Positions 4,433-55,081 of a stretch of DNA of 64,000 nucleotides are shown here, piece by piece. A program made the translations under genes and the position numbers. The notes beneath the pieces were generated by a model, which worked only from the letters and a program-made list of their open reading frames with translations, did no database searches and was not told the origin of the DNA. The stretch's first letter is position 1. Every line of letters starts with the position of its first letter. Source of the stretch: Laetmonice hystrix (taxonomy: Eukaryota); the NCBI GenBank assembly GCA_965235115.1, contig OZ249436.1:9920001-9984000 (forward strand). The letters run 5' to 3'.

Positions 4433-4455
4433 ATGGCGAGCGCAAGAGACAAGTG
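4433..4455 (+). CDS. STX8: Syntaxin-8 exon 1 (MASARDK-W, 23 nt)
   Basis: aaacATGGCG start context. Ends AAG TG|GTAGGT; the split Trp codon joins exon 2 in frame (compare human MAPDPW). Confidence 0.8.
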
Positions 4456-4894
4456 GTAGGTTTTTAACAGGAAATCATTGGTATACAGCAAAGTGTGATG
4501 TGTGACACGATTACAAGATTCAGTAGAGAATAAATGGAAACGATATTTTCTAAGAGAGATAGGATCAGATAGCGGTAATTTGCCAGACTAACTGTAAATT
4601 GTCACATTGCTGTGACTCAGTGACCCACCCCACCACGGATGGCGGTGTCGATGCACGCCCCACCCCCGCCGGGGCCCCGGGGCCCGTTGACGTTGCTAGA
4701 GCCTTGCCCCAACTTGGCCTTGCCCTTGGCTTGGCCCAAGTCAAGGAATACTGCAGTGGCTTGCAATAATAATGTCATTACCTATTTAATTAAGTTGTAC
4801 ACACTGGGTAACCTAACGTTATACGGGGGGGGGGGGCTAGAGTAGTACTAGTAGTAGGGGGGCATAACCCCCCCCCCCCCAATATTTTGCAATA

Positions 4895-5217
4895 GGGCGC
4901 CTAAGTCTCGTGACCTGGTTATGCAAATGACGTTAAATAGCCTCAAACCAGCTCGCGATAGCACCAAACGTACGCCATGCGATTGTGACGTCAAAAATTT
5001 CCCCATAGGATTAGCATTGACAGGGCAGACAGGTTTACAAAAACCAGCCTGTATATTCACAATCTAACTTTCTAAACTATAAAACAAACTTTATCCTAGA
5101 GTAAACATGCCAGCAATCATGTATTGTAATGTTGAAATATTAACAGCGACTTCACTGCAGAATGAAAATATTTTAAAGTTGAAATCTCTTGAATTCTCGT
5201 GACATACTTAGGCGCCC
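4895..5217. mobile_element. MITE (323 bp) with 12-bp perfect TIRs and a TA target duplication, in STX8 intron 1
   Basis: TA|GGGCGCCTAAGT ... ACTTAGGCGCCC|TA; no coding capacity. Confidence 0.7.
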
Positions 5218-5309
5218 TATGGTGCTAGTCTCTTCAGCCTTCAGGGCTTTGTTTCTATATAACAAATAAGTATCTGTTATCGAAAAGTACTGGAAAAGTA
5301 GTGGTATAA

Positions 5310-5581
5310 CAGGGGTGGAAATTAAAGTTTTTGGGAACTAGCCAGCTGGGCTAGTAAAGTAAAAAACCAACTAGCCCTGATGAAAAATTACTAGCCCACA
5401 TGAAGGAAATGTCAGATGCCCGGGCCTGTTTTGCAATAAATTAGCCCCAGTCAGACCGGGTAAGTCAATAAGTGTGCCTATCCCCAGAATATGCTACTGG
5501 CCAACCAGGCATGTGTTTTGTCATGTCTAGTCGCCCGAGCTCGAATTCAGTCGCCTCGGTTGACTCCAAATGTCACCCCTG
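5310..5581. mobile_element. hAT-like non-autonomous element (about 272 bp)
   Basis: Ends CAGGGGTGGAAATT and AAATGTCACCCCTG are imperfect inverted repeats starting CAGGG. No intact 8-bp TSD, so probably old. Confidence 0.4.
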
Positions 5582-6144
5582 TATTTAATGGGAATATCCC
5601 ATGATGTGTACAGAGCCCTTGCGTTGCACCTTGCCCTTGGTGCCATTATTGCTGTCTAACATATTACAGGGCTTGGGCTCTGCACTTGCACTAGGTTAGA
5701 CAGGGATAACAGCATCTTTCATGGCGTCATGGGTGGGTTATTCCCTAACTATAGTATCGGTACAGCCGGATTTTGCATCATTATATGGAAAGCAAGATAT
5801 CCGAATTCTAATATCTTTCGACTTTCTCCTAAAACCTATGTCATGTTAGTGTGATAACCTACACAAAACTATTTTAGACTGTTGTAGATGAAAACAGAAT
5901 TAGCCTACTGTAATAATAACCACTCTGCATTTAACTGTACAATTGCTATTGTTCACATGCAAAGAGGTTGTAACATGTGTGCATGCTTTAATTGCCCGCT
6001 CGTGCTTCCACATGGATTTTGTCTGAACTGAGACGCCCTTGAATAGAACAAGTAGGGTACTGAAGGAAGAATTCTCGCCTCTTTGAAATTGAGTCACCTC
6101 TATGAGTGATAGAATGATGCTTTAAATGCTGTCTAATGTTCCAG

Positions 6145-6244
6145 GTTGGTTGACTATGAGAGTTGTGCCCAGTTGGGACAGGATGTCATGGAAAAGATTG
6201 CCACCAGAAACCGTAACCCAAAAGGCAGCACAGCATATACTAAG
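6145..6244 (+). CDS. STX8: Syntaxin-8 exon 2 (100 nt)
   Basis: ttccag|G TTG GTT GAC TAT...ACT AAG|GTAATG. Encodes (W)LVDYESCAQLGQDVMEKIATRNRNPKGSTAYTK, similar to the STX8 N-terminus WFSTYDSTCQIAQEIAEKIQQRN. Confidence 0.92.
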
Positions 6245-7495: not shown

Positions 7496-7590
7496 GAATG
7501 TGCTCACATACGCTCCTCACTACATCAGTTCTCAGCCCATCTGAATAATCTGAGACAAGACCTTGTGAGTACGGGGATGAGATACTCTAT
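7496..7590 (+). CDS. STX8: Syntaxin-8 exon 3 (95 nt)
   Basis: ttttag|GAA TGT GCT...TCT AT|GTATCC. Encodes ECAHIRSSLHQFSAHLNNLRQDLVSTGMRYS(M); phases fit both neighbours. Confidence 0.85.
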
Positions 7591-8995: not shown

Positions 8996-9106
8996 GACAC
9001 AAAGAGAACTGGAGCGTAGGCAAGCACAACTGGATCAGCTGTCTACCAAAGAAAAGCAACTAGATCAAGCCTTCAAAAATAATGGACGCACAGAATTTGG
9101 AAATAG
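8996..9106 (+). CDS. STX8: Syntaxin-8 exon 4 (111 nt)
   Basis: aattcag|G ACA CAA AGA GAA...AAT AG|GTAGGC. Encodes TQRELERRQAQLDQLSTKEKQLDQAFKNNGRTEFGN(R); compare STX8 TQLEGDRRQNLLDDL. Confidence 0.92.
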
Positions 9107-9341: not shown

Positions 9342-9466
9342 GTCATCCTTACTAGACATGGGACCTGGCAGTATTAACAGTAACCCCTGGGATGCCACTC
9401 CTTCAGTGGACCCTACAGGCATATCCTTCGATGACATACGACAGCAGCAGCAACATGCGATAAGAG
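9342..9466 (+). CDS. STX8: Syntaxin-8 exon 5 (125 nt)
   Basis: gccccag|G TCA TCC TTA...AGA G|GTAGAG. Encodes SSLLDMGPGSINSNPWDATPSVDPTGISFDDIRQQQQHAIR(E), with the NPW and FDDIRQQQQ motifs. Confidence 0.93.
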
Positions 9467-10361
9467 GTAGAGAATTAGGTTTTCTTCTGTTCTCTTTATT
9501 TGATAACGTAAGCTTCATTATCCTGTCATGGTAATGGACAGGATACTTTGTCTCTGTTATACAAATATTAGCCACTGTGACCCCACTTATTTCAGGTCAC
9601 AGCTTGCAACTTTATCATGTGTTATTTAAGATTCCATTGATTACTCCTCTTTATGATCTTAAAGAGTCAGAGTGATCGTGTAAACAGGTTGAGAATTTTT
9701 TTTACTGTTTTTTTATGATGTGGTCCCGACTATAAAAAGGTTGACAGAGTACGGCTAGCCAATATGATTATGAAATAACATTTTTGTGAGACTTGAGCTG
9801 TAAATAATAAATAATAATATGTTTACACCTATGTAAACCAGGGGCCACAAACTAGATTACTGATCAAAGCGAGAGGGTTTTAGAAAAAGGGCGCTAGTAT
9901 TGTAGTATAGTGGTAGTTACCGGAGTGAGTCACTACTAGGTGGCGCCTCTAAAATGTGATATCGGACAAACAAATCTCCAGGTGGCAGCACCAACAAATG
10001 CGGGCGGCAGCACTGTCGAACCCTACCAGCCGTGAAACGCCAGGACAGTTTGGTTTCAGTGAGGAAGTTTCCTTTGCTCTTTCTTTTGATGTATTTTCAT
10101 TGAAACAAATCAGACCTAGACGATAGAAACAAAAAAGCAAACCTTGCTGTGCTAAATTCTGTCATCCTTTTGACCTAATGGAGAGGATAGTTTAATTTTT
10201 CTCGCAAGGTCTTACAAACATATCACTGGAGAAGAGTAGGGCGTGGTCCCGATGACCTCCTATATCATTTCACAATCGTCATTAGACAGTTGAAATAAGA
10301 AAAAAGAAACTTTTCCCGTCCCAAAGATTGCCAATAGGTGCCAACAGGACGAAATTCTGTG

Positions 10362-10590
10362 TAAGGTCAGGTGCAAAATATCACTGGTGTACATAGAGGA
10401 TTTATCTAAGGTCAGGTGCAAAATATCACTGGTGTACATAGAGGATTTATCTAAGGTCAGGTGCAAAATATCACTGGTGTACATAGAGGATTTATCTAAG
10501 GTCAGGTGCAAAATATCACTGGTGTACATAGAGGATTTATCTAAGGTCAGGTGCAAAATATCACTGGTGTACATAGAGGATTTATCTAAG
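10362..10590. repeat. Perfect 45-bp minisatellite, 5 copies
   Basis: (TAAGGTCAGGTGCAAAATATCACTGGTGTACATAGAGGATTTATC)x5 plus TAAG; explains ORFs 10260-10610 and 10387-10626. Confidence 0.97.
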
Positions 10591-13500
10591 ATAAAAGTGC
10601 AGACGTTCATCTTGTGTAAGTTGTAGTTTCTTGTGACTTTGAATGGAGCAAATGACAGTCTTTCTTTTGGTTATGCCTATAGTGTTTACAGATGACAGAT
10701 AATTGTTATTATTTATCTCTGGGAAATGTACAACACAAAAGACGTTACAAAATATTGCAGACCAAAGCCTGTAATCTTCGTCACCAGATAAGGGGTGTAC
10801 AGAACATTATCTACCCGTATACTAACACCAAAAACAACATAACGCCTTTATCGTCCCATCATATTTCTGAGTTTGCTGCCCCAAGTATTTGATCTGATAG
10901 TATGATCTGATCTGAGAAGGACAGGATCTCGGCCTCACCTCTCCACAAACTATACAAATGGAGCCAGTGCTATAGTTCTCGTTCTATGCACAGTTTACAT
11001 TATTGACATTCGTGTTCTTACATTTTTGACAGTTGCAAAATTTGATAATATGTCAACATTACTGATAAAGACTGCGATTGCCAAACGAAAGTGGCTTTTC
11101 AGTGGTCAGGGCCATTGCGCCGGGATTGGATCCGGGCAAGTGGTATCAGGGCCGACCAGGGCACAGAGGGCAGCACCACCGTCTCTAGATCAAAAGTCTA
11201 ACATTAAACAATATCGAGAGTGGTCGGATGGGAACAGCACATCCAGTTGGGTGCACTGGAGCAAACTCGCGGTAACCAGGGCTGAAATGAAAAAAAAAAT
11301 TGTTAAAAATAAAGATAAATAAAAAAAAGAGAGTAAATAATGGGGGGAGGGGGGTGTAGTAAGTGACATAAAGTGAGGGGGCCCCAACGGATTCCCCATG
11401 CACGCCCGCATACACACCCGAGAAGGGAAAAGTGAAAGGCGAAGATGGAGAAGATCAGCTCCAGGTGTTCATGCCTCCTGGGCGAGGCGTTACATTCTAG
11501 TTACGCTCCTCCTGTGGCCACGGGCGGTACAAATTTCAGAAACACCCTTGGTTACATAACTGTGGCCACAGACCTCATAATCGCCTGTACTTCGGCAGTA
11601 AAAGTCGATTTCACAACGACAATGTGTTGAGATGGGTTCCCAGTGGCACGGGCGTGTCGTTCAGTTAGCCAATTGTTGTGGTTTATATCCTCGCCAGGGG
11701 GATGTAGCTCTAGGGCACTGTGTTCCATTCATAATGTTTCACCGGCACCTGCGTTGCATTACGCTGCGTAGCTCCTGACAGCCTCCGTAAGTAGGCCCAG
11801 TACTGTGGGGAGCGTGGGGAACCACATTGATCAGCTGTAGAGCTGATGGATGGTGAGCCTGCTACACAGTGGTGTAAAAAGTCACCTCAAAGCAGGTCAT
11901 TTACCCGTTAACTGTTTTCACAATGCTATAAAATAGTCATGCGTAGGACCTGATAAAATTTCCCATTTAACTGACCAGAAATTAATCAGTCCGGACAGTC
12001 TGGTTAAATCAGAATTCACCCGGAGTGTAGGTAGCTAAGTTAATAGAGGTAGCATGTAATATTTATTGAGAACGAATACCGAACATGGTAATATTGAACC
12101 CAACAAGGATACGCAGAAGTCAAGTCGTATTATCACATATATCTGAACATTAATTAAAGGCGTTTTAATAGATATAGCTTGAGGCTGACATGTAAAAAGG
12201 CCCGGAATATTTCATTTTACGCACCGATACGTCAGACAATGTTTTTCATTAAAAGATTAATAAGCTAGTAATTTATTCCATTCAGCTACTTGGAAACAAC
12301 AATCGATTTTAAGGTGACCACTGAGAAGTATCTAGGAGCGAATTTAAAAGTGCTAGATACGATATGCGCACCTCGTCATGAAAAGCGCTGTCAGTCTAAC
12401 ACAGAGTCAGGATGCTGCTCGTTCCCATTAAATGTCGTTCACTGTGGTCCGATAACGGTTCGGGAAGACTGCCGTGATGGACTGTTCCCAACAGGATTCA
12501 GGCAGTGCATGCTGGAGCCAGCCGACCTCAGTTCAATGAGGTACTCCCCGACTACTGAATTGTTAAAATAAAAATGTTATCATATGTATTATGTTGACAT
12601 AACAGAAACGGTAACTTTATTCAATAGGCCCTTTCATTTCATATATTAGTATCATTTTTATGATAATTTCTTCAAATGATAGATTGGGCTGGGGAGGGAG
12701 ATGAGGAAATATTTCTTTGATACGCCTGCTGGCTTTAAGATGTCAAACAAATCAATTAAGTTAAATTGTGATTTAATTTGAGTTTTATCTGAGTTACCTT
12801 CTAAAATCGGTGAACAAAATACCGGTAGGGGTTATAAAGTTTTATATGGAATTGGCTTTTAATTTAAAAAAATAATCCACATTTTGTGGACTCCCTAATA
12901 GCTTGTTCATCAAAAAACTACATCGATAAACAAGGAGACAATCCTGCCATAAGGTAGAAAACCTACATCGCTCTAAAGTAAATTGTTTGTTCGCTTTAAC
13001 CTTTGCTAAATGGCAGGAACGTTTTGTTTGCAACAAGCTCTTAAAGAGAGGAAAGGTTTGAAACGACTCGTTTTTACTGCTCTGCCTGTCTATGGGAGAG
13101 TGAAATGTTGTTTACATGCACAGTATTAACAAAACGGAGCATTTTATCCTCAACTACCAGGGCGGGCTAGTGTGCACCTGCTACAAGCAACACTTTGTGC
13201 CATTACCGGCATAGTAAATGTGGAAAGGGGCCTGGGATTGTATGTCGCTCGCATAGTAGCAGATGGGAGGTAGGAGAGCTGGTGCATCACACGGGGCACA
13301 TATGGAGACAATTACCTGCCGTATGGACCGTATTCCTAAGCCTGTTACATCAGCGCACCCTGGCGGGTTTCAGGAGAACTACTCTTACCCCGCACCAACC
13401 GCCGGTACTGCACTTAGCTCGACCATCAATAAATTATGACAAACAAAACAAGGAGTAATAACATACCTGAGAACTTTTCTGGAAACTTCACTATCCTCTT

Positions 13501-13843
13501 CATCTTTAAACTATTTATGTATAGCATGCTCTTAAATGTGAATTTTTGTTTCGTCGTTCATCAGGTGTAGATGAAAGTCGGGAAAGAATTGAAATGAGAG
13601 GTTGCAGTTTTCGGAATTTTGGCAGCCCATAATCACTTATGTCAAATAGAAGCATATAGATACTTCTAAATAGACTATAGGTCTATGATAGAAGTAACTG
13701 ACGTAAAGGGCTTATTTCTACGCAGGTGGAGCCTGCCTGCGTAACATCCTAAAAATAAGAATTAATACACGAAACTTTTAATACGTGTAGTTTATGATGT
13801 TACATCAACATATATTTTCATAGTGGTACGAGGAACATACTTT

Positions 13844-14039
13844 ATGTGGTCCCATTAAGTTTTTAATAAAAATTGACGTTGCGTTGACATAAAGGCCCAC
13901 ATCACGTCAACGAAACGTCCCCACCGTCCGTCCTTCACTTGGGTGGAGTCGGACCTACGTCAAATCGACATAAGAAGTAGCATTCTACTTCTTACGTCAA
14001 CGCTACGTCAATTTTTAGGCAAAATTTATGGGCCCTCAT
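13844..14039. mobile_element. Small foldback/MITE-like element (about 196 bp)
   Basis: AAAAATTGACGTTGCGTTGACATAA (13868-13892) versus the reverse complement of 13992-14016 matches at 23/25; weaker inverted similarity extends outward to ATGTGGTCCCAT / ATGGGCCCTCAT. Confidence 0.6.
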
Positions 14040-15207
14040 ACTGGAGGTAAGAACTGTCAATGTTTTCTACACCATGATGTAACACCAGCTAAAACAGGTA
14101 TACGTTATAGTAAATCTTATTTATTTTAGAAATGACATACTGAGATTTAAATTTTGTATATTGACTATGAAAAACCTTAACGTTTAAAAGTTTAAAAATA
14201 ACACAACAGGAGTTACATTGCCAGTGACGTGAGAAACTTGAACATGATTCATATGTATCCTTTATTTACTATGGTCACTGTACTTCCACATTTAATATGA
14301 CGCCTAGCTGTCTGCCGATTCATTGGTCTTTTAAAAGACACTGAAGAACTTAATACTTTTTTTCAAATTGGCTGAGCCGGAATAATTCTTTGCACTCAAA
14401 ATGTAACAGTTTATGGTAAACAAAGGACGATGAAGTCATTTGAAGTTAGTTCCTTACTGATGCAAACTTGAAATTGGAGAGGCCCAGGGGTACTGATGAC
14501 TGAAATCACCGACTGCTCAACCACCAAGAAAAAGTCCTATAACTCAGTGTTTTCAAACTGGTTTTACCCCACATGTCTATGGGGGTTTGTGGGAAGTGAA
14601 AGAAAAATTACTGATCACTTTTGTGACAGTGTTTTACTGGTACTCGCCCCTCCCCAGCACCGATATAATTCCACCCAGATCTTCTAGATGGCGACAACCT
14701 CTGGGAGTTTCTAATCCAGAGGGTATATTAATCACGGGCAACTCTTCCATTGCGCAGTTGAAGCTAACTCAAGAGTGTTATCGGGTTTCAGAAAGGCTCC
14801 GAGATGCTGACGTGAGAAAAGGCTGACATATTCCAGCAAAACAAAACGTGTGTTAGGAAGTTTTGCACATAATCTTTGGTGGCCCGTGGGGATCTATATT
14901 CTAGCTTGCTGTAAATTATATCTTTCTTGAAGTGATTCATATTTTAAAGATCCTCAGATATAAGTACTACCTCGAGCTCCTGGTTGACTAAGCCGTTCTT
15001 GTTGAGCCAGTCAGCAGCAAAAAGGACTGCGTGGACGTAAATTCGCGAAATATTCAGCAGGAGATATAGAGATGGCGGTATTCCGTGAGAGAGAATTTGG
15101 AGGAATATATAATCAGTCTGTATTAGGTTAAACTCGTATGACCTGCTCACAATAACAACTCACTGGGTATCTCTATACGAGTTGGAATTACGTATCACTC
15201 CACACAC

Positions 15208-15652
15208 AGTATACCTGGTCACATACTGTCATAACACCGGGAGAGGGAGGAATTGAATATACCTGGTCACATACTGTCATAACACCGGGAGGGGGAGGAA
15301 TGGAGTATACCTGGTCACATACTGTCATAACACCGGGAGGGGGAGGGGGAGGAATGGAGAATACCAGGTCACATACTGTCAGAACACCGGGAGGGGGAGG
15401 GGGAGGAATGAAGTATACCTGGTCACATACTGTCATAACACCGGGGGGGGATGGAGTATACCTGGTCACATACTGTCATAACACCGGGAGGGGGAGGGGG
15501 AGGGGAGGGGAGGAATGAAGTATACCAGGTCACATACTGTTATAACACCGGGAGGGGGAGGGGGAGGAATGGAGTATACCTGGTCACATACTGTCATAAC
15601 ACCGGGAGGGGGAGGGGGAGGGGGAGGGGGAGGGGGAGGGGAAGGCGGAGGA
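15208..15652. repeat. G-rich minisatellite, 8 copies of a constant core with variable (GGGGA)n tails
   Basis: Core TATACCTGGTCACATACTGTCATAACACCGG followed by GGAGGGGG... tracts of variable length; ends in a pure (GGGGA)n run. Confidence 0.95.
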
Positions 15653-15989
15653 ATGACTTAAAAGGAAAGCAGAAGTCGCGTTTAAGAGTTTAATATTTAA
15701 CAATAATGTGAAGATATATCCCTCTTTATACTCTGTCGGCCGTATGTATCCAGTCTTTTGTTCACTCTGGCTGATGTACTTAGCTCAAGGTAATGTTAAC
15801 CACAAAACAGTCCTGACATTCTCATGAGAAAATGTTGGCAGCTTGTCGATTTGATTTACGTTTTAGAGCACTTATTCCATCATCAACTGTCACTAACCGA
15901 CAGAGGTAACCAAGGTATTTGGAGTGAAGCCCTGCCTAGAACATTTACATACTACCATGATATAATTTGATTCATTACGTCTGTTTCAG

Positions 15990-16082
15990 AACAAGACGAG
16001 GGGCTTGACGTTCTCTCACAGGTGCTGAGTCGGCAGAAACAAATGGCCACCGACATCGGAGCTGAAGTGGATGGTCAGAATG
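15990..16082 (+). CDS. STX8: Syntaxin-8 exon 6 (93 nt, first half of the Qc-SNARE motif)
   Basis: gtttcag|AA CAA GAC GAG...AAT G|GTGAGT. Encodes (E)QDEGLDVLSQVLSRQKQMATDIGAEVDGQN(E). Confidence 0.96.
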
Positions 16083-42100: not shown

Positions 42101-43377
42101 TTCACACATGTGGTTGCTATCGGAACTTCGCACTACTTCTAACATCCTAATCAGCGGAGATGGATACCATATGACACGAGCTATGAGATTCTCTTTGTGT
42201 GGACCGTCAGGTCCGTGGCACCCTAGCACGCGCCAACACTTTTTACCGAGCAACCATACGAACGCCGCTACACGGCCGGTGCCTGTGTCTACAATACCCA
42301 TTTAGGAAACCTCTTTGAGCGTTTGAAATATAATAGAAACGAACCAGACTCGAGTAATGCACATGTATTTTAACTTGTCATATCAACACTTTCGCACTTG
42401 AACTCGGGTGACTTACATGTGTGACGGTCTAAGAACAGATTATCTTAAGAAACCAATTACATAACCTTTTATGACATTTCATTGTTCGTAACCTTTTTTT
42501 TGGAAACCTTCTACATCCTAAAAAAACCGGACCTGGACCAACATCGTATGCAAGCTTGAATTCCATGGAAACATTGTGTTTCACTTCCAACGCTACACTG
42601 GGATTAATAAGGGATAGTTTCGAGTTTAAATACGTGTAGAAGTGAGATGAATTACTTAGTGCTTGCAGGATTGTACATCCAGTAGACGGTCCTGACGGAC
42701 CAAACAATATGCACAAGATGGGGTGAGCCCGTGTAACCTATAGGATAAATAATATATACACATAATTGAAGAAACGACGCAGTTCATAATAATTATTATA
42801 TCAGCTGATTTTGTTCCTTGCGGAGAACAGGGATCTGTCCATTTTGACGAGAGGTTCTCCTTGACGGCCTTCCTTTGTTCTATCCAGAACAAGTTCCACA
42901 GTCGGACTTCAATGTCACTTCACGACGAGTGATTATTATGCATTTCTTACATTAAGTCAGCAGACGAGACAACGGTGAGACTTTGAAGTCCAACAGGCAA
43001 TCCATGGCAACTGAAGGTGGAAGTCTGGACGCCTAAGTCTGGACAGAGTACGTTATCTCTGATAACGGGTAGGTTCTAGAGGTGTTTCTAGACACACACC
43101 GCACATCTCCTGACGGAGAGCATGTTACGGTGGAGTCAGAGAAAGCAGTCGTTCCGCTGGCAGCTGTAAGCCTTAGGTAAACTAGATACATGTTTTTCAT
43201 GTATTATGTGTTCATGTAATTTCCATTGCTCGCCACCATAATATAGCTCCATGGGTGACTTTGTCCTTTGAGTTATAATACTTAAATTAAACATACGTGC
43301 TTGTGGGATATAGTCATCTACCAGCAGTCTGGTTCAACTGTAGACAGGTACACAGTTAAAGAATCTCATCGGATAGT

Positions 43378-43383
43378 TTTATT
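43378..43383 (-). other. Possible proximal netrin polyadenylation signal (AATAAA)
   Basis: First AATAAA I saw on the - strand, about 285 nt past the stop. Further candidates lie near 40.9 kb and 39.1-39.6 kb, so the 3' UTR could be much longer. Confidence 0.3.
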
Positions 43384-43666
43384 GATGTCGTAGGGATTCT
43401 CCTTGGGTTGAATACCGATATCCCATGTTTGTTTTCTGATTGTCCTAGTCTGGTATTGAGTCCTACAAAAACCACGAGTGTCACAGATATCAACTTTGGC
43501 TCAGTTCACTGCAGCCTAGATAAAGAAGATACAGTGGTGCTGACGACCCCGCTGGTGGTGGCTGACGTATACGTCCTGGGACTGTCCACTCCATGCTTGG
43601 CCGCCAGGATAACGTGAGGATCGGTTAGTTGTGGCTGGAGGGGCCGGGAGGGGGAGAGATCCCACC

Positions 43667-43828
43667 TCAGCACCGCCCCTTCCGTTCGTATCGCTGGAAA
43701 CGTTTTAGCCGTCGCTGCCACTCATCCTGCCATGGAATGACGATACTCTTGCGGTCGAGCGTGATGCCACTCCGATTGCTCGTTTTGTTGTCCCTGCTGA
43801 TGATCAGGTATCGTCTGTGTAAACGAAT
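43667..43828 (-). CDS. Ntn: Netrin last coding exon (162 nt including stop)
   Basis: ttttttcacag|ATT CGT TTA...TGC TGA. Encodes IRLHRRYLIISRDNKTSNRSGITLDRKSIVIPWQDEWQRRLKRFQRYERKGRC*, the basic netrin C-terminus. Confidence 0.95.
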   Translation of the reverse strand: MRLHRRYLIISRDNKTSNRSGITLDRKSIVIPWQDEWQRRLKRFQRYERKGRC

Positions 43829-45798
43829 CTGTGAAAAAACAATAACACGTGATATCAAACGTTACGACAATATACATGTGCAGGGCCCAACTTTTGATTT
43901 TAATCTTAATGTTTATGATTGGCTGGCCTTTGCAGATCAACCAATGAGAACCGTTTAGCTTAAACATGAACCGGGCCCTGTGTAATATGTATGGCCAGGT
44001 TCGAGCAGGCTTTCAGCATTGGCATTTCATTCTGCAAGGATCACACAGGACATAATTAGGCCTATAGCGTATGTAGCTATTATCGTTCTCTGTAGTGTTC
44101 CAGAAGGAAGGGTTCCTTCTTTCTAGGATAAAAGCAATCCAATTCATTATACAAGTCCCTCCTGTGATACAGTCACTATATGCGGAGTGTCCAGAGTGGC
44201 GATTTCATATTTTACTGAAAGAAGTAAGCAGAAACAACAGCCAATGCTTGGCTGGAACCAGCAGCGGTCCCTACCAGTCCTAACTCCCACTGGCTGATGT
44301 AACTGGTACTTTGGTCGTAACTGTGGGCGATACCTCCTCAAGTTAGAAACAGACATAAAATCTGAACGTGTCAAACTGCATGGTTATAGTCCGATTTTGG
44401 GTCTATATCGATTGATATCTTATAGGGCCTAGTTATATCCTGCTCAATACAACCTAGAACCTTACGGAGTTGATTTCACGCCAGTCTTTGGTAAATGTCT
44501 GTTGTGTTGTTAGTCACACCATGCAAACCTAGAGATTACTAAAAGTACTGCGACGGGATACTGCATGCTTTAACTGTCATGTCGATTCCAGTTTACAACC
44601 ATCACGAAATTACGGATTTTTGATACGTTGCATCTTGCGGGGATGACCATCGTATTCTTATTGGTGTGAACGCTGCAATGTGTAATGATTATTCTAGTGT
44701 GTATGGTATAGTCTAAAACGACCCACAGAAGTAATATTTCTATTTGATCAGTTCGTCTATAGAGAGGGCTGAACGCAGAGAGTTTCTGACGAACCTAGAG
44801 CCCTCTTTGCCTTACATCATGCAAATAATTAGGTCAATGTAACCAGAGTAGGTATACGCCCGTTAGCACTAAGTTTAACTTAATTTCTCCCATGCATTTC
44901 ACTATGTGTTGTAAAAATCGTACGAAAAACTGTCAAAGTCTTAACGATATAGATCAGAAGTGTTCATTAATAGAACTTAATGTTCTGTTTCTGAACATCA
45001 TTCTGAAAGATTTGAAATAAATCGCAATATTTCTATAAGGATATTGTTAAACTCATTTCAATTTGAGATAAAAACTTGAAAAAATAAATTACATTTTCAG
45101 AATCAATTTGAGTTCAACCTTCATCAAAATATTGCGATTATTCCATTAAACTATTAATGGTGCAATAGCACTTGATTTGTTAGTGGCAAAATATTCAAGG
45201 TTTATTCTCTGCCGGTGATGACAATGAGTGCACAAAATGTCTTCCACCACTAGCATTATAAAGCTCATGATGAATTGTCGCCCATGTCTGTTCAAATTAA
45301 TACTTCCTCTTCGCAAAAACCCTCAGATTCCTAGTTCCTTGAAACATGCGAAAGCCTCATGAAATGTCAGATTCTTTCCACTTAAATCAAAACGCTCCAT
45401 GCTGGAGCATGTTAGAAAACTTTCATGCGTCAGCAAAACCAAATCATGCAAAGAAACTGTCTCAGAACACTGGCCTACCGATAAATGTTGTATAGCTGTT
45501 TTTGATTTGCCTCTTCCCTGTTGTGAGACAAAAAAGTTTGGAATGTAAACGCAATGATTGAAAAAAAGGATTTTGTTGTGCCACGATTTCTACCGACGGT
45601 GTTACCTATAAAGAAATGGCGTAATAAATCAGAGGTAATTTCCAACTATATTTCACGTTTTTCTCCCCCCAGTTCAAGCTCGGGTCTGTGTGTTTCCCTG
45701 AAATATTGAGCTGGGCGTTTTATTCCATTAAGGGTATAGCTGAGCTCAGAGATTTTCTACCCGGGAGATTGAATGTGAAAGAATTATCGATATGTTAC

Positions 45799-45956
45799 CT
45801 TAGGGCATTTACACATGAGGTCGGACATGGCCACCCAGATGACATGTTCTCCACGTCCTACTTTGTTTCCTCCCAGTTTGTAGACTGTGATGACGTTAAC
45901 CGTGAACTTCACCCACTCATTCACCGTCTCCCGTCTCTCCACCTCCGCCTGGATCG
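45799..45956 (-). CDS. Ntn: Netrin exon, NTR domain core (158 nt)
   Basis: cgcctcctag|CG ATC CAG...CCT AAG|GTAACA. Encodes (A)IQAEVERRETVNEWVKFTVNVITVYKLGGNKVGRGEHVIWVAMSDLMCKCPK. Confidence 0.95.
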
Positions 45957-47833
45957 CTAGGAGGCGAAAACAAAGAAATAAATCACAAGGAAAACGTTAA
46001 AGAAGGTATGCAACAACAAATTATTTGAGGTCTTGGAGAATACTAGTAGGCATGGGCATATTTCACAAAGATTACTCATGGAAAGGAAGTACAGTATAGT
46101 TACGTTTGAAAGCCGCTACTTATGTTTGCGTGTCTACGGATCATAAGTTCTAACCCCATCATTGAACATAAAAAAAAATAATCCGCGAGGATAATTGTTT
46201 CTATGTCTATTATTCACATCAATATAAGTCTCATACAGGCCTCCGAGCGTTTGTTTGTGTGAACGGCTATTTTGGCCTCTCTTAAATTTTCTGAAGATAA
46301 TGCTAAGGTCAAGACACGTCATTCAATTTTACATGCTAATGAAGTTATCTGGAGAACATTTTAACATCACTTCTTGTGAGGACTCAGTGAGACAATTCGT
46401 AAATAAAAACCCAAGCAGTTTTATCTTTTACTTTGCTAGAAGTTGTCCAAATATAATTTCACTTTTTATAAAATCTCTCCTTAATCAAGCTGAACACAAC
46501 AGGCATAATAATCGTGATGTCGAACCATAACAATGGAAAGAAAATGAAATGCTTCGAACATGTCAGATGGGAATCTATTAGCAGCCTTATCGTTTGCAGC
46601 CAGCTGCTCGGAGATCGGACCATGGCGTCATAACTATGTACGATTCTAGGAGAATATTGACGTCCTATCCAACCGCTAGTCCAAATCTGAGCTGAATAAT
46701 GATAACTTAGTAGAACAGATTCAGTATTCTACTAGACTGAAAAACTTGAACAACTACGCCGACCAACGCGCAATGGAACTCGAACGGTATACAGTTATTT
46801 GCCGATGTAGAAGTAATACTCTACGTCTTTTGACATTATGCTGGTGAACAATATCGATAAGAGACACTGCATAATATGATAGAACTGCCCATTATGTTGT
46901 AGGCCTAAACAAGAACCTTTGGATAGAAACCGATCATATAGGGGCCTAGATTTTCGTAAGGAGTGAAGATGGACCGCGCCTGGAAGCTGTCAACAGCAGG
47001 CGTGTAGTAGCCAAGCCGGCCGGTATGCTGCAACATGACAAACTGCAGCACGCCTCCCGTTTTACAACAGAGAGCCGTGCTTCAGAACACCGACCTCCCA
47101 GACTTCTTACAAATCTCTACAACTCCAATCACCCTGGACAGTCACTTAGTTCCGCTTGCACTGACGAACCCCATAACCGATTTTCTTATTCAGGCGCTGA
47201 AACTTCACACAAACTTGGCCACCCGACTACAGATGGGAAAATAATCAATTTGTTTGTGGAAGGGTAGTTTTCTGTATTTTTAGAGGTGGTGGTCGGGGTG
47301 TCCGCGAACGGACGATCGTCTGGTCTGCCATATTTATCTTGCCGCCAGGAGGCGAGCGCCAAACACGTCACCCCTGAACTTTGAGCACCAGTTGCCGCCC
47401 CATACACATCCCTAACTTTCAGTTCGACTAACATCCTTATAGGCCTAGATCAGGAGGCAAGCCGGATTATCGTATCATGGACTCCACACTGATTAGTCAT
47501 CGTTAATTACTAATAACGCTCGGCAAATAGTTGGCATAACAAATTGTTGAGGAAACCGCCTTGCGCCAGAGAGAGGGTTAACACATTCTGTAAAGAAACC
47601 AAGAAGGCCCTGAGTTGTAAATGGTTCTATGACATGGTATCAGTCTCTTTAAGAAAATACCGACCTCGCTTATCGGAGTGCTTTAGGTATATGCTGCCTC
47701 GAAAAAGTGTGAGGCCTATGACGGTGAGTCAAACGGAGCGGCGACGGCCGTACGCCAGGAGAACCGAGTCAATGTTATGATTGTAACCTGTTGCCATCGC
47801 CAACTATTGAGCGGTATTTATGCGCGCTTATAG

Positions 47834-47871: not shown

Positions 47872-48880
47872 AGTCTGTACAAACACCCGTACGAGGAAAG
47901 GACGCCAAGACCCGGCCATGGTGGACACGTAGCCGACTGCTCTGTCTATTCTAACCGACAGACTTGTTCACGTGGGCACGAGGCTGGGATGAACGCAGCC
48001 GAGTTCACGTAGACAGTTGTATAGGGGTAATGCTGGGCGGATAAAGGCAGACATGTTCAAGTCTGGGGGTCAGGATGCTATACCTGCAGCTAAAGGTTAA
48101 CAGGTGCGGGATTCTTTTCGACCTCAACATTTCAAACATGTTGTCGTGTGAAACGGCACACCCTGCTACCGAATGGATCTATTCCATGTGGCAGCACTGC
48201 TGATCATTTAGCCCTGCAGGATCTCTTCTTACAAAACGACCTGAGATTCGAAAGACATCGAAATAGTAAAACAACAACTTTGTTCTTCGACGCAAAAGAT
48301 CGCTGATATCCAAACACACAGAAATGTTGTACTTTTGACCCAAGGAGTTCTTCCAAATAATAAACGCACAGATTGTTGAAGATGAAGACAGGTCTGAGGG
48401 TGATCTTACTCGGGCGATATTTGGATGCTGAGTGACACAAAATGGGTGAGGGGTCCACGGCAGGTTGACCAACACGACCACACGAGAATATTACCTTCAC
48501 GAAGCACGCAATATGTGGGCGGAGAGGTGTTTGATTGCAGGCACGACAGTTCTGGGACATTTCTCTAGATTCAGAGAGACTTGTCTGCTGCCTCTGGCGA
48601 TCTTAATGACCTACTGTGAAGGGTTCTGGTAGAGTTTAGATATCCTAGTGCCAGCGTTAGCTTGCCACTTCAAGGATACAGAGGAGGTCTCTGAACACGT
48701 CAAATGAATTTGCTGGTTCACCCTTCAGTATTCTGAAGATCAACTGGCTATTTCTGCTCGCAAAAGGGGCAAGCCTTGATATTACCTTGCAAGAGAGATT
48801 GACTTTTGAAAATAAAATCAAATAAGAACATTTTCAGTGACTGCTGTGTAGCAGTTGGCGCCATAATTTGTAGTACTTAC

Positions 48881-48946
48881 CGAAGTCACGTCTGCAGTAC
48901 TTGTGGATATTAACCTTCCGACTCGCCGCTTTACATTTGCCACAAT
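48881..48946 (-). CDS. Ntn: Netrin exon, start of the NTR/C345C domain (66 nt)
   Basis: ttattttgcag|AT TGT GGC AAA TGT...TTC G|GTAAGT. Encodes (D)CGKCKAASRKVNIHKYCRRDF(A); compare netrin-1 KINMKKYCKKDYA. Confidence 0.95.
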
Positions 48947-51900
48947 CTGCAAAATAAAATGATAATAATTAGACAAATGAATCTTCTGAAGCGTTCTACA
49001 ACGCCTTAAATGAGGTTCAATAAGTCAAATTTAACTAGATAATTTGACATAGGTCTTATCAACAGAGGGAGCCTATCACTCAAACACATTCCAAAACACA
49101 CGCGCAGACAGAGCCTGCTTGATGTACTCATGTGGCCAATATCTCAATCAGAACTTTCGTGTCTTTTTGGAGTTGTTTGAGTAAACAGAAAGAAATCAAA
49201 GGATGCTGACATATGCTGGAAACTTTGAAACCGTTTCTAGAAACGGTTTACAAAATGTTACAACCCAAGTGATTGCTAATTATCGCCATGGTTGCTATGT
49301 GACTGAAAGCCACTTTGGTCTCGTCGCACATTCTCTGGGCGCGGTTTATGACGTACGCAGACGAAGACGCGTCAAGCGCCACCTGTGGGACATAAATTAG
49401 GGCGATCTGTCAGAGGAGGCCACTCTGAGGTTGGCAGGAGTCGTTTTAAATTGCGCGACACCTGCAGTCTGCGAGCAACAGGCTGCCTCCGTTATTCACC
49501 GTCTTTAGCCCCTCACAACCACGGGTAAAGCCACTTCCTAGACGTGGCTGTCCGCCACCCCTTGTTCGCGGTGTATATATCAACGGATTACACAAAATCT
49601 TTCTGGCAAACTCATCGTTTCCGCTCTTTTAAAAACTGACACTTTTACATGTTGTAGTTGGTTTACAACGAGCAAAACGATTTTCCCGATGAGAACATCA
49701 ATCTTTTAGTTAAAAAGTTAGACCTGTTACGAGCTCTTTACATATGAACGCAGGCGCAACAGAAATGTTTCGTTCCAGTTGCCGAGGGAAAAGTTCGGAA
49801 ACTATATGATATCAACGTTTATTACAATGATATCCTCAGGTCAGTCGTGAGGACATATACCGGAATAGTAAGTTATTCTGGTAAATCCCCATGTTCTGTT
49901 GTTTGTCAAAATCTGACATGAAAACTGAGCTATTACCTAACAAGGACCGAAGTCCTGCTGTAGCGAAGTTTGCCATTGAGAGGAAAAGCAGTGTGAAAAG
50001 TGACAAATTGACTTCTTTCACAGACAAATAATGAGGGGCTGTCAAAGGGCCTTTGTAGATAGGGTCTTCTAGATTGCAATCTGGCATCTTTAGACTGACG
50101 GACTGAGTACTCCAGATCAATTAAGTCGGCAAATAGCATGGCAATTGGCTTCTGACAATCTCGACACGCCAAACGTCATTAGCGGAGTAAATGCTGATGA
50201 GATCTGGTAGTTGATAACCAAGTCCCATGGTTAACGAACAGTTTCCTCTGTAAGACATCGACAGAAAGTTATGCCCGAACGTCAACTGAAGGCCACACAC
50301 CACGTCCGAAGACGGGCCCGATTCAAAGAGAAACGCCGAGGATGAGATGGCGTAGTTCTGAGGCGACAATTAGTATGACTAATTACAGAGGTACAGCCAG
50401 GAGCATTTCGGTAATATTACCGATTCTGTATCATTTCAAGTGATGTCCCTCTTGGCAGTGATCCGGACAACAAAGAACGAGCGAGATGTAAATTTATGTC
50501 ATGTCTGCTATACGAAAGTCCGGTGAAGGTACCGGTAACTTTTAAGATCCATCTAGACCCTAAGGCTACGGGATGGTGCACTACAAGGTAGGTTCCCTCT
50601 ATGTTGTAAGTGCTATGGGAGGGCGTGTACATGTGAAGCATATATATCGATTGAGTCCAGATCCAACAAGGTGACAATGGACACACCACTAAACACATAT
50701 CGCACACGGCAGTAATTCGTCAAAAAGAAGACTCTCTCAATGCATACCTCGGTAGAAGCCTGTGGGGGTCATGAACACATTGGGAGAAAAGGCGGTCAGT
50801 GGCCGCCAGCACTCGCCGTCTGAAAGACCTCACTCGGCCGTGGACGCTCACAGCCACACAGGGTCGTCGTTCTCGCAGCATTTAGCTCACAATACATTTT
50901 ACGCGCTGTCGCATGCTCTCAAAAGACTAAATCACCTTGAAAACAATCTCACGGGTGTATCAAAGGCTCATGTTTGGATTTACATTGGCCGCAATCGTCA
51001 ACATATCATCTCATAAGGTGTGATCTAGGCCGCTCTGGGCCGCTCGCGATTTAAAGCAATTCCCATTTGCTTGGAAAATACGTTGACCCCGTGTCGTGCT
51101 GAATCAAGTGTTAGCCAGGCGTGAACTCGGTGAAAGGAGGTAAGAGTGTACAAACTGGAGGTAAACGTATAAACGGGTCGATGCTATCATGATGGGAGTC
51201 GGAAACGAATTTTGGAAAGGAGGCGAAGACTTCCTACTTTTCTGATTGTCTGACTATCGTGTTAAAGCGGAGATATGTAACAGAATAATAATGCCCCGAC
51301 CGATGAAACGATCACCTGACTGCTGGCAAACATGCTGCCAACATTCCAGAGCTATAAATTTGTCAGTTTTGAAAGTTATTAGGATCTGCCGATTTAGATT
51401 CCCAGTGTGGACTGGGTCAATTATCTGAGGAGTTAGTCGATTGCAGGAAGAGGCGGAACACTCCAAAAGGTTAGGCCACCCACAGGTTTGCAGAGCTTCT
51501 ACACTTGTTGAAGGCTTTACAAAATGTCAGAAGGCTGAAGAGGAAACCCAAGGCTCTATGCGCATAAGTTAAAGCAATATCTCAGTTGCTTCTACTGATA
51601 TGCGATTCGATGCCCTAGGACCCCAATACTTTTAAATTAAAGCTTTGGCTCCTAAGCCCACTATACGCCTGAACGACAATTAATGGCCAAGGAATAACAA
51701 AGACACCCTTTACCCATCAATTGTGCTCAGTGTCGGGGCTGGCTGACGCGGAGGCCCTTACGTGCATGCCGCCACACACCAATATGTCTGCTCGTTTAGC
51801 AGCATTTGCTTGCCTCAATAAAAACGATTTGCGCGGTTCAATTGAGGCACAAAGGGTCCGACAAAGGACGTCAACTATGGTCATCCTGAGGAGCACATTC

Positions 51901-52420
51901 CATGGCCTTCTCCTGGGTTCTCCATGGTAAGTGTCCTATTAGGGCTAGTTATGGGTTCGTTCTCACTTCATCATCGCTGACGTAGGACTTGGAAATGATC
52001 ACGGGGTGTAACTATAGAAACGATCCCGTTCTGACTGCAGCTTTACCAGATCCCCGAACACCTTATAACCTAGCCGCCCATAGAATACTGTTTTGTCGTA
52101 CGACTGTATACATCCTGTAGGCCTACTCGACTATATATCTGGCACATACTGAACGAGGGGGTTCTCATGACACGAAAAGTGTACCATTTCCACAGTTCCT
52201 GAAACAATGGTTCCTTGAATTATGAGATCAACCCTCTAACCGCCAAGACAGCAATTTGATTTCTGTCCTATACACTACTGTAAGGCTAGTTATGATGGAT
52301 TTGGAGTTTGGCCTTGGGTCAGTATTTTTGGTATCCCTTTGACACAGTGAGCCAGAAGGTTGACTGGTGGTGAAGATAAGGCAGGTTGACGAGTAGGCCT
52401 AAAGAACCTACCTGATTTAC

Positions 52421-52477
52421 CTCGTCCTCCCGGCGATCGTGTGGCAGACCAGGTCGGTGTTGTCAACTTGGGAATCT
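52421..52477 (-). CDS. Ntn: Netrin linker exon (57 nt; 66 nt if the second donor at 52412 is used)
   Basis: ttttacattctag|AG ATT CCC AAG...CGA G|GTAAAT. Encodes (K)IPKLTTPTWSATRSPGGR(D), equivalent to the KIP... Ser/Thr/Pro linker of netrin-1; phase 1-1. Confidence 0.85.
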
Positions 52478-53844
52478 CTAGAATGTAAAAAAACGGTACT
52501 TTGTGTTAAAACTCCATTCTCACTTGATAGGACCTACATTCTATATTGTCAAACCGGAAACACAGTTTTCAACTGATTAAGAATTTATTAATCGCACACC
52601 AAAAAGACAAGAAGAGAGCAAACCTAGTTCATGACATCAAGTTCTCAATACCATCTAAATATATCTTTAAGTTCCTCTGTAGTCGTGGTATGTTGGAAAT
52701 ACAGAACAACTGTAGAAGTGCACTCTGTACTGATATATCAGGTGTTAGATATACACGTAGTTTTACATGTTATTAACAGAAGACACGTATAGAGGGCGAT
52801 CATGCCTTAACTGGGAATCATCCGACCACCATCAACATGAACACGATAAAGCAAGCGGCATCCGTGCATATATAGCAGTGGCCAAACCACGCCTTGGATC
52901 GGTTACATGTCATGAGACAAGTCAAATGGCGGGATCCTGTGTTTTTACTTGATATAACAGAACCAAGACAATGTACGTGCGTCGTCCTTAGGGCCTAATA
53001 TCCGTAGAGATGTTCGTCTCACGTTTGTTGCTGCCAACCGACATGAAGCGTTGCATTTCCGTGTCCGGTAAAACGTTAGCATTTGTTTTTGCTGTAGGCC
53101 TACATCATTACATTATTGAAAATCTAAAAACTCCTTTCACGGGACGTCGGGAATTCTTGCGGCGAAGAAGTTTTAAGCAGTAACATTGTGTTTCACCGCG
53201 AGGCAGAACTCCTAAATAGAAATGTCTTTGCTTTGTATTTGTAAGTAGGGAAACCAAAGCATGCTAAAGAAATAAAGAACTAACTTGATACCGCATTAAG
53301 TACATTTCCGTCCCGTGCTTCGTTGATCTCCACAGTGCCTGTAAGACAGTATACGGTATATCAAACACGTTCGTGCCACAGACGTAACGAACTAGCCAGG
53401 GGTGAAACACATTCAAGCAGGCCGCCGCCGTAAGCTGCCCTGATCGCCAGTTGGACCCTTTTTCTCAGCGTTTTAGTGTTTTCCATAGTGTCCACGATGC
53501 AAAAAGTCATTGTTAGCCTAGAACGCTGCATTCTGTTGTCTCTACTGCTGCGGCTTCCGGTAGATGGACCAGTTAGGACGCTAGTCGTCACCGGATGTGA
53601 CGTCATGCAAGGTTGTTCATTCCTTAGCGTTCCTACGTGGGGCGGAACCTGTGATGGTGATCTCTTGGTCTAAACTCCAGTATGTTAGAATGGACTCAAT
53701 TCAACTAAACAGGTGGATTTTCATGCGGGAACTGCTACTTGTAGAGGGATATGTGGGTTCAGTATCCGTCATGCGAGACATAGAGAAAAACAAACACGAT
53801 TGGACAAGGACAGTGTCCGATCCTAGCACTGAGCCTGCGCTCAC

Positions 53845-53970
53845 GTGTCCAGTCGGCAATACCGGACCGTGATCTTTGGATAATTTCTTTTCGAGGTATT
53901 TGCGTTATGTCAGGCTTGGTTTGACAAACGGGGTCCTCGGAAATACCTTCAGGCTGTCGACTTTCACATT
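53845..53970 (-). CDS. Candidate in-frame cassette exon in the netrin linker (126 nt, unverified)
   Basis: Acceptor ccctttgtctgcag|AA, donor ACA C|GTGAGC, phase 1-1, no stop codon. No recognised homology. Confidence 0.3.
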
Positions 53971-54931
53971 CTGCAGACAAAGGGTCTAATAAACGAGTGA
54001 GATATAATACATAAAACGTAGAGGAAGGTGATCTAAGATAGTTTAGCATTTCTTGGTGGATCACCTTGAGTTCTATTGCTCCAAAGCGACGACATAATTC
54101 TTTTACACGTACACATTTGTGCCCTTCTATTGTGGTCTAAACGTAGGTCGGGATATTTTTAACAATGGCAGGTTCCTAATAGTGCCATTACCTGGCTATA
54201 CATCTCAGCCTTCTCTATAGACACTGTGCATACAGGGAACACATAAACACACACTGATAGAACACGGTGGTCTTTTCAAGGCGATAGAGTACGCCTACGT
54301 ATACATTAGTTACTCTGCTGATTTTCCCTCTTTCCCTGAATACTAGAGCATTTCTCCTTTTAAAGTCTCGTTTCATATTAGGCCAAAAGTAAAACTTGCG
54401 AATTACCTAAAGCAGTAGGGCGTAATGTTATTTCCCCCGTTTGAGTTCTATTTATAGGCCTAGCTATAGGCCTACCTAAGCCTGCTATTCTTGGGTGTCT
54501 TTCAGATTTGATGACAGCACGTCGTATCTCGAGTCTAAAGTCACTGGGGTGCATATACACCCCAGTGACTTTCCTACTTCCTACGAATAGCAGGTTAAAC
54601 TTAAAACAAACTTGCGATAGTTGAGGAACGTACCTCTAGCTAGTTGCTAGGGGTAAAATGTTCACTAAATTCCCTAAGATACTGCTTATAATGTGCATAC
54701 AGGCTCATTATGACCATGACTAAACAGATCGACAGATCAACTAAAACCTGAGTGAAATCTTAGACCACTTAGGACTATACAAGCACATACAGCGGGCAAC
54801 AGTACTGATAGGATTTTTCAAATGTGTCAATCGTGCACGATGCTCGACAGACGATGGCTGCTATTGGTTGATTGATGAGTGGTCGCTATTGGCTGCTGGT
54901 GACGTAACCAGGAAGACGTCAGAGCACTTAC

Positions 54932-55081
54932 TTATGCACGGCGCCACGGGCGAGCGGCTCTGCTGGTAACCTTTGGCACACCTGTTACAGGTCGTGCCCG
55001 TCACTCCGTCCTTGCAGGGACATTGTCCAGTTGTCAGGTTGCAGGTCTTGCCGAGCGCTCCCACCGGGTGGCAGTCACAAG
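54932..55081 (-). CDS. Ntn: Netrin (netrin-1 type) exon encoding laminin EGF-like repeat V-3 (150 nt)
   Basis: tttcag|CT TGT GAC...ATA A|GTAAGT. Encodes [50 protein letters not shown], diagnostic for netrin-1/UNC-6. Confidence 0.97.

What the first reader, a model, noticed from the sequence alone, without database searches (positions are those of the whole stretch)
4433..55081. STX8 and netrin tail-to-tail as in human NTN1-STX8: a candidate ancient genomic regulatory block
Seen: STX8 (+) ends at 33128 and netrin (-) ends at 43667, 10.5 kb apart and convergent. STX8 introns are short away from netrin (1689, 1251, 1405, 235 bp) and long toward it (6523, 4100, 12767 bp). Known: human NTN1 and STX8 are adjacent and convergent on 17p13, and human STX8 has very large distal introns. 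Inference: STX8 is a bystander gene whose 3' introns carry netrin enhancers (netrin is a floor-plate/notochord gene), which would have kept the pair linked since early chordates.
Basis: partly seen in the sequence, partly recalled or inferred. Interest (0 to 1): 0.72.

Follow-up and report, generated by a model that had tools for sequence, protein, structure and literature searches.

The report
Ancient STX8–netrin tail-to-tail gene pair
An annelid worm genome has the vesicle-fusion gene STX8 and the axon-guidance gene netrin end to end, and a ribbon worm, amphioxus and a coral share this layout, so the pairing predates bilaterian animals, but nothing here shows that STX8 introns regulate netrin.

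Summary
The 3' exons of a netrin gene (-, stop at 43667) converge on it across a 10.5-kb gap.

Two corrections:
- Netrin does not start at 55081. Its first coding exon lies 31 kb further on, outside the window.
- The genome is a spiralian, most likely an annelid, not a chordate.

The same convergent STX8/netrin adjacency was found in three other phyla:
- the nemertean Lineus, gap 5.2 kb
- Branchiostoma, gap 2.8 kb
- the coral Porites, gap 3.0 kb

The pair is therefore much older than "early chordates". It probably dates to the cnidarian-bilaterian ancestor.

It was not seen within 10 kb in Priapulus, Saccoglossus, Haliotis or snow leopard.

The regulatory-block reading remains untested:
- The 3'-long intron gradient is not seen in Haliotis, Porites or Priapulus.
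- No non-coding conservation was detectable, but only other phyla could be compared.
- No RNA or chromatin data exist for this species.
- No paper in the held library describes the pair.

Verdict: a new, well-supported member of a known class, ancient conserved microsynteny. The bystander mechanism is plausible but unshown.

The parts
3622..4248 (-). First coding exon of a Fringe (Notch-modifying glycosyltransferase) gene, head to head with STX8
   Evidence: 208-aa ORF. Pfam Fringe PF02434, E 4.4e-11. The same Fringe/STX8 divergent pairing occurs in Haliotis.
4249..4432 (.). 184-bp spacer between the Fringe and STX8 start codons, a presumed bidirectional promoter
   Evidence: Coordinates. Function is inferred.
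4433..4455 (+). STX8 exon 1
   Evidence: Splice model
6145..6244 (+). STX8 exon 2
   Evidence: Splice model
7496..7590 (+). STX8 exon 3
   Evidence: Splice model. The alternative junction lacks a good donor and acceptor.
8996..9106 (+). STX8 exon 4
   Evidence: Splice model. Profile hit.
9342..9466 (+). STX8 exon 5
   Evidence: Splice model
9467..15989 (+). STX8 intron 5 (6523 bp), first of the three long 3' introns
   Evidence: Holds tandem arrays at 10362-10590 and 15208-15651. No cross-phylum non-coding match.
15990..16082 (+). STX8 exon 6 (start of the SNARE motif)
16083..20182 (+). STX8 intron 6 (4100 bp)
   Evidence: Tandem array at 17805-18024.
20183..20284 (+). STX8 exon 7 (SNARE motif), the most conserved exon
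20285..33051 (+). STX8 intron 7 (12767 bp), the largest intron
   Evidence: SINE-like element at 31717-31947. Tandem arrays at 27210-28275. No Pfam hit in its ORFs.
33052..33128 (+). STX8 exon 8 (transmembrane anchor and stop)
33129..43666 (.). 10,538-bp spacer between the two stop codons, holding both 3' UTRs and the true intergenic DNA
   Evidence: First poly(A)-type hexamers are about 300 nt beyond each stop. No Pfam, Rfam or tRNA hit. No cross-phylum match.
43667..43831 (-). Netrin last coding exon (C-terminal half of the NTR domain, plus stop)
45796..45972 (-). Netrin NTR-domain exon
   Evidence: Exact splice sites were not fixed.
48879..48950 (-). Small netrin exon (linker and start of the NTR module)
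   Evidence: tblastn with Lineus, Mytilus and Patella netrins and a DNA match to the Lineus netrin gene. Borders are approximate.
54933..55082 (-). Netrin laminin-EGF V-3 exon. The gene continues 5' beyond the window.

Best explanation
The window holds a complete syntaxin-8 gene and the 3' part of the genome's netrin-1-type gene, tail to tail, in a spiralian (annelid-like) genome.

Shown: this is an inherited, very old gene pair. The same two orthologues sit convergently, 3-10 kb apart, in a nemertean, in amphioxus and in a coral. The arrangement therefore goes back at least to the cnidarian-bilaterian ancestor.

Inferred: the pair has been kept because DNA needed in cis by netrin lies in the shared 3' interval and reaches into the last introns of the housekeeping gene STX8. 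That DNA would be distal enhancers or a boundary element. A break between the genes would then damage netrin expression. This is the 'developmental gene plus bystander' type of conserved microsynteny.
For: Gene identities.

Convergent adjacency in other phyla:
- Branchiostoma: netrin followed 2.8 kb later by a 239-aa gene on the opposite strand whose exons match STX8 exons 7 and 8.
- Lineus longissimus: gap 5.2 kb, 236-aa SNARE gene, exons 5-8 mapped.
- Porites lutea: STX8 followed 3.0 kb later by a convergent 580-aa Laminin_N/EGF/NTR gene.

Wider linkage: netrin and STX8 sit on contigs of identical length in all 12 species named in both search lists. These include the 322-kb Lottia scaffold.

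Mammals: the order NTN1-STX8-WDR16 is given for dog.

Local context that fits a 3'-directed regulatory landscape:
- Netrin's 5' neighbour, an LRR-GPCR exon, is only about 9.4 kb upstream.
- About 77 kb from STX8 intron 5 to netrin intron 1 is almost free of coding sequence. It has few local repeats and no nested gene or RNA family.
Against: - No regulatory element was shown.
- The intron-size gradient is absent in Haliotis (about 11.5, 5.2, 1.2, 15.3, 4.4, 3.2 and 4.6 kb), Porites (about 0.5-2.8 kb) and Priapulus (all 1 kb or less).
- blastn and nhmmer found only coding exons conserved between the window and the six other loci.
- The pair is not within 10 kb in Priapulus, Saccoglossus, Haliotis or snow leopard.
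- The NTN1 regulatory elements described in a paper I read lie in the NTN1 promoter and in NTN1's own intron, not in STX8.
- Netrin is a secreted cue, not a transcription factor, so it is not the classic kind of GRB target.
Confidence: 0.55

Rival explanations
1. Neutral retention through a small target. Convergent genes share a short, promoter-free spacer, and a break inside either gene is harmful. Very few rearrangement breakpoints can therefore separate them. The pair survives in slowly rearranging genomes without any shared regulatory DNA.
For: Spacers are small wherever the pair was seen: 2.8, 3.0, 5.2 and 10.5 kb. No conserved non-coding sequence was found. The intron gradient is not conserved. 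The pair appears loosened or lost in Priapulus, Saccoglossus and Haliotis at the 10-kb scale.
Against: Gene order within chromosomes is otherwise largely scrambled between these phyla (established knowledge: Irimia et al. 2012, PMC3514665). Retaining both adjacency and orientation in four phyla, plus vertebrates by report, is far beyond an average pair. In snow leopard STX8 has grown to 252 kb, yet carnivores are still reported to have NTN1 as its neighbour.
Confidence: 0.33
2. 3'-end coupling. The two convergent transcription units depend on each other's termination region, through shared terminator or insulator elements, transcriptional interference or antisense overlap of the 3' UTRs. This fixes the tail-to-tail orientation.
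For: The orientation, not just the adjacency, is the same in all four phyla where the pair was seen.
Against: Annotated gene ranges do not overlap in Branchiostoma, Lineus or Porites; the gaps are 2.8-5.2 kb. Here the first poly(A)-type hexamers lie about 300 nt past each stop, leaving about 10 kb between them. No transcript data are available.
Confidence: 0.08
3. Independent, chance juxtaposition of the two genes in each lineage.
For: None beyond the fact that only one species per phylum was inspected.
Against: With roughly 20,000 genes, a given gene has a given neighbour in a given orientation with probability of about 1 in 40,000 per lineage. It was seen in four phyla.
Confidence: 0.01

Closest known systems
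Human/mammalian NTN1-STX8-CFAP52(WDR16) locus, 17p13.1
   Same: Netrin-1 and syntaxin-8 are direct neighbours, with netrin on the 3' side of STX8. Dog order is NTN1, STX8, WDR16. Snow-leopard STX8 has a head-to-head 629-aa 5' neighbour. The convergent orientation in human is from my own knowledge.
   Different: Mammalian STX8 spans about 250 kb, against 28.7 kb here. The 5' neighbour here and in Haliotis is Fringe, not CFAP52. No gene was listed within 10 kb of the snow-leopard STX8 3' end.
Ancient conserved microsyntenic pairs (Irimia et al. 2012, Genome Res 22:2356, PMC3514665)
   Same: Orthologous neighbours kept adjacent across distant animal phyla. One partner is a developmental gene and the other a housekeeping-type gene.
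   Different: The main text of that paper names neither gene and its supplement is not held. I cannot tell whether the pair is already on their list.
Genomic regulatory blocks with bystander genes, such as Pax6-Elp4 and Shh-Lmbr1 (Kikuta et al. 2007; from my own knowledge)
   Same: A developmental gene next to an unrelated, broadly used gene with long introns on the side facing the developmental gene. Long-term synteny.
   Different: The defining arrays of conserved non-coding elements and the enhancer-promoter contacts were not shown here. The target is a secreted ligand, not a transcription factor. The known cases are mostly vertebrate-wide, whereas this pair reaches a coral.

Membership tests
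Syntaxin-8 (Qc-SNARE) | Full-length similarity to proteins annotated as syntaxin-8 | tested here: met
   45-57% identity over about 235 aa to syntaxin-8 of spiders, Priapulus, annelids and molluscs.
Syntaxin-8 (Qc-SNARE) | C-terminal SNARE motif followed by a single transmembrane anchor | tested here: met
   Exons 6-7 match the SNARE part of an STX8 profile. Exon 8 encodes a hydrophobic tail that aligns with the Lineus and amphioxus TM exons. Orthologues carry Pfam SNARE PF05739.
Netrin (UNC-6/netrin-1 type) | Laminin N-terminal domain, three laminin-type EGF repeats and a C-terminal NTR module in one gene | tested here: met
   Laminin_N E 4e-82 plus EGF in L004:1221-2258. EGF_laminin in 54864-55109. 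NTR in 45787-45996 and 43670-43861. Colinear tblastn with mollusc and nemertean netrin-1.
Ancient conserved microsyntenic pair | Orthologues adjacent, in the same relative orientation, in several distant phyla | tested here: met
   Annelid-like window, nemertean, cephalochordate and cnidarian. Not seen within 10 kb in a priapulid, a hemichordate, a gastropod or a felid.
Ancient conserved microsyntenic pair | Retention above that of matched control pairs | not testable with these tools
   This needs whole-genome gene orders of many species. Only 12 single-gene look-ups with 10-kb flanks were available.
Genomic regulatory block (target plus bystander) | Array of conserved non-coding elements spanning the target and the bystander's introns | tested here: inconclusive
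   No non-coding match to six loci from other phyla. No close relative's locus could be fetched, so within-annelid conservation is unknown.
Genomic regulatory block (target plus bystander) | Elements in the bystander drive or contact the target gene, not the bystander | not testable with these tools
   No RNA, ATAC or Hi-C runs exist for this organism.
Genomic regulatory block (target plus bystander) | Long bystander introns on the side facing the target, as a conserved trait | tested here: not met
   Present here. In Lineus only the last three introns were visible (about 0.18, 0.25 and 3.7 kb) and the last is the largest. Absent in Haliotis, Porites and Priapulus.

The most novel reading that the evidence does not exclude
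STX8/netrin is a regulatory block as old as the cnidarian-bilaterian ancestor. Part of netrin's cis-regulatory landscape, or its 3' boundary, is embedded in the last introns of STX8. This has locked the two genes tail to tail for over 600 million years in corals, worms, amphioxus and vertebrates.
Probability: 0.3. Interest if true: 0.65.

Novelty: new member of a known kind. Interest (0 to 1): 0.5.

Why it matters
Netrin is the archetypal midline axon-guidance cue, and little is known about how its expression is encoded outside vertebrates. A gene pair kept in one orientation from coral to mammals gives a concrete, small interval of 3-10 kb plus a few introns. In that interval, enhancer or boundary function can be tested in compact genomes such as annelid, amphioxus and coral. 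It can also be used to ask whether deep microsynteny reflects regulatory constraint or merely a small breakpoint target. It further corrects the framing of the finding: the linkage is not a chordate feature.

Tried and rejected
- Chordate origin of the window: rejected. The best netrin and STX8 relatives are spiralians. A netrin exon-1 tree places the window inside Spiralia with an unnamed clade, apart from molluscs.
- My own interim reading 'mollusc': dropped.
- Look-ups that gave nothing. Patella, Haliotis, Lingula and Argiope netrin isoforms were not on record. The Owenia record was withheld.
- Cross-phylum search for conserved non-coding DNA: only exons matched (blastn with word size 9 over 184 kb against six loci; nhmmer on the tail-to-tail intervals).
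- Genome-wide repeat mapping of intron 7 showed only one SINE-like family, because the tool scores the best candidates only. Self-comparison of 184 kb found few local repeats.
- Nested genes or RNAs in the long introns and the spacer: none by Pfam, Rfam or tRNA scan.
- Expression data: only four DNA runs from one study and no RNA.
- Literature: no paper holds STX8 and NTN1 together with 'synteny'. None holds 'genomic regulatory block' together with STX8, or 'regulatory block' together with NTN1. None holds netrin, syntaxin and microsynteny together. Irimia 2012 has no held supplement. The truncated supplements of Robert et al. 2022 list neither gene as a pair.
- The spliced 241-aa STX8 protein has no reference, so it was never sent to a database tool. 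An exon-7 alignment was used instead.
Full report
**What is in the window**

A splice-aware reading of the + strand gives an 8-exon gene from 4433 to 33128. All junctions are GT-AG. The 241-aa product is 45-57% identical over its whole length to proteins that databases name syntaxin-8, in spiders, Priapulus, annelids and molluscs. The gene is single-copy in this 627-Mb genome.

The − strand carries the 3' exons of a netrin:
- EGF V-3 at 55082-54933
- a small linker exon at about 48950-48879
- two NTR exons at about 45972-45796 and 43831-43670, with the stop at 43667-43669

The two stop codons are 10,538 bp apart and the genes converge.

**Two corrections**

First, netrin does not begin at 55081. 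A Laminin_N search of the whole genome, followed by fetching the flanks, shows more exons outside the window. There is a tandemly duplicated EGF V-2 exon (L002:2043-2478, window-equivalent 66043-66478). There is also a 345-aa first coding exon (L004:1221-2258, window-equivalent 85221-86258). The gene spans at least 42.6 kb.

Second, the genome is not a chordate.
- Netrin exon 1 is 80-87% identical to spiralian sequences and 65-70% to chordate ones.
- STX8 is closest to annelid and mollusc proteins.
- A maximum-likelihood tree places the window's netrin inside a supported spiralian clade. It groups with unnamed ENA/Logan sequences, apart from molluscs, brachiopods, Lineus and Owenia.
- Other agents of this scan call the genome an annelid, which fits.

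**Surroundings**

- STX8 is head to head with the first exon of a Fringe gene (3622-4248, −). The start codons are 184 bp apart.
- Upstream of netrin, the next coding sequence is an LRR plus 7TM (LGR-like) receptor exon about 9.4 kb away. CUB exons and a PAZ-domain gene follow.
- The roughly 77 kb from STX8 intron 5 to netrin intron 1 is almost entirely non-coding. It holds a few tandem arrays and one abundant SINE-like element. It has no nested Pfam domain, Rfam family or tRNA.

**Is the pairing conserved?**

| Species (group) | Result |
|---|---|
| Branchiostoma (cephalochordate) | Netrin is followed after 2.8 kb by a convergent 239-aa gene whose exons match STX8 exons 7 and 8 |
| Lineus longissimus (nemertean) | Gap 5.2 kb to a convergent 236-aa SNARE gene; exons 5-8 mapped |
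| Porites lutea (coral) | STX8 is followed after 3.0 kb by a convergent 580-aa Laminin_N/EGF/NTR gene |
| Saccoglossus (hemichordate) | Not seen within 10 kb |
| Priapulus (priapulid) | Not seen within 10 kb; STX8 is a 3.6-kb gene |
| Haliotis rufescens (gastropod) | Not seen within 10 kb; both genes are on the same 22.5-Mb scaffold |
| Snow leopard (felid) | No gene within 10 kb of the STX8 3' end; STX8 is 252 kb |

In all 12 species that appear by name in both protein searches, the two genes lie on contigs of identical length. These include a 322-kb Lottia scaffold.

For mammals, a dog GWAS paper lists NTN1, STX8 and WDR16 as neighbours. That order, together with the snow-leopard 5' neighbour, puts NTN1 on the 3' side of STX8. 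The human strand orientation is from my memory only.

Chance juxtaposition in four phyla is out of the question. The pair is ancestral, probably to cnidarians plus bilaterians.

**Is STX8 a bystander carrying netrin enhancers?**

This could not be tested directly, and the indirect evidence is mixed.

- The intron gradient is real here. Its chance probability is only 1/35, and the comparison was made after the fact.
- The gradient is not conserved. Haliotis introns are about 11.5, 5.2, 1.2, 15.3, 4.4, 3.2 and 4.6 kb. Porites introns are about 0.5-2.8 kb. Priapulus introns are all 1 kb or less. In Lineus only the last three introns were visible in the fetched locus, and the last is the largest at 3.7 kb, against about 0.2 kb for the other two.
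- Sensitive DNA comparisons of 184 kb around the window with the six fetched loci matched only coding exons. So did comparisons of the tail-to-tail intervals with each other. All comparators are from other phyla, where non-coding alignment is not expected, so this neither supports nor refutes the idea.
- Close annelid relatives exist only as unannotated contigs that I could no longer fetch.
- No RNA or chromatin runs exist for the organism.
- One paper on NTN1 regulation places its elements in the NTN1 promoter and in NTN1's own intron.

**Most likely explanation**

Shown: an ancient, orientation-preserving microsyntenic pair.

Inferred, at roughly one chance in three: it is held together by netrin cis-regulatory or boundary DNA in the shared 3' interval and the last STX8 introns.

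The main rival is about equally likely. A short, promoter-free spacer between two genes that cannot be broken is simply a very small target for rearrangements. 3'-end coupling of the two transcription units is a minor rival. Annotated gene ends do not overlap in three species.

**Comparison with what is known, and novelty**

Conserved ancient microsynteny and bystander-type regulatory blocks are well-described classes (Irimia et al. 2012, PMC3514665; GRB literature from my knowledge). No paper in the held library names this pair in that context. The supplementary lists of the key surveys are not available. I therefore class it as a new member of a known kind.

It deserves moderate interest. 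The conservation is deep and clean, and the interval is small enough for direct experiments. The mechanism that would make it important is still unshown.

Noticed in passing
window 3622-4455; L017:1-10001: The Fringe(-)/STX8(+) head-to-head arrangement has start codons 184 bp apart here. It is also present in the abalone Haliotis rufescens, where the annotated gene ends are about 200 bp apart. The block is therefore Fringe<->STX8-><-netrin in at least two spiralian phyla. In snow leopard the head-to-head partner is a 629-aa gene instead.
   Followed up: partly
L002:2043-2478 (window-equivalent 66043-66478); L016:26856-27304: The netrin EGF V-2 exon is tandemly duplicated (192 and 195 nt, about 50 bp apart). 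The same duplicate pair, with a conserved spacer, exists in the nemertean Lineus, whose protein contains only one copy. Amphioxus, Saccoglossus and Porites have a single exon. This is probably a spiralian pair of mutually exclusive exons.
   Followed up: partly
protein P0341 (Logan contig of 1043 bp, species not given): A mammalian transcript contig encodes STX8 exons 1-7 joined in frame, exactly at exon borders, to the last two exons (NTR domain) of netrin-1. A sense-sense fusion cannot arise by simple read-through of convergent genes. It points to a local rearrangement, trans-splicing or an assembly chimera in that sample.
   Followed up: partly
window 31717-31947: A SINE-like element of about 230 bp with at least 39 copies at 93-97% identity on many chromosomes. 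The first look found 2225 candidates for the whole intron.
   Followed up: no
window 10362-10590, 15208-15651, 17805-18024, 27210-27418, 27862-28275: Minisatellite arrays inside STX8 introns 5-7. The first has 5.1 perfect copies of a 45-bp unit.
   Followed up: no
L005:1727-2824 (-), L006:3628-4236 (-), L008:9127-9507 (-): Upstream of netrin lie an LRR plus rhodopsin-type 7TM (LGR-like) receptor exon, CUB-domain exons and a PAZ-domain (Piwi/Argonaute) exon.
   Followed up: partly
L011:3754-6114 (-): A 787-aa serine-rich open frame with no Pfam match, 24-26 kb beyond the Fringe side of the window.
   Followed up: no
L019 (Priapulus), L018 (Porites): STX8 gene size varies about 70-fold: 3.6 kb in Priapulus, 10.6 kb in Porites, 28.7 kb here, 46 kb in Haliotis and 252 kb in snow leopard. 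The protein stays at 217-241 aa.
   Followed up: partly
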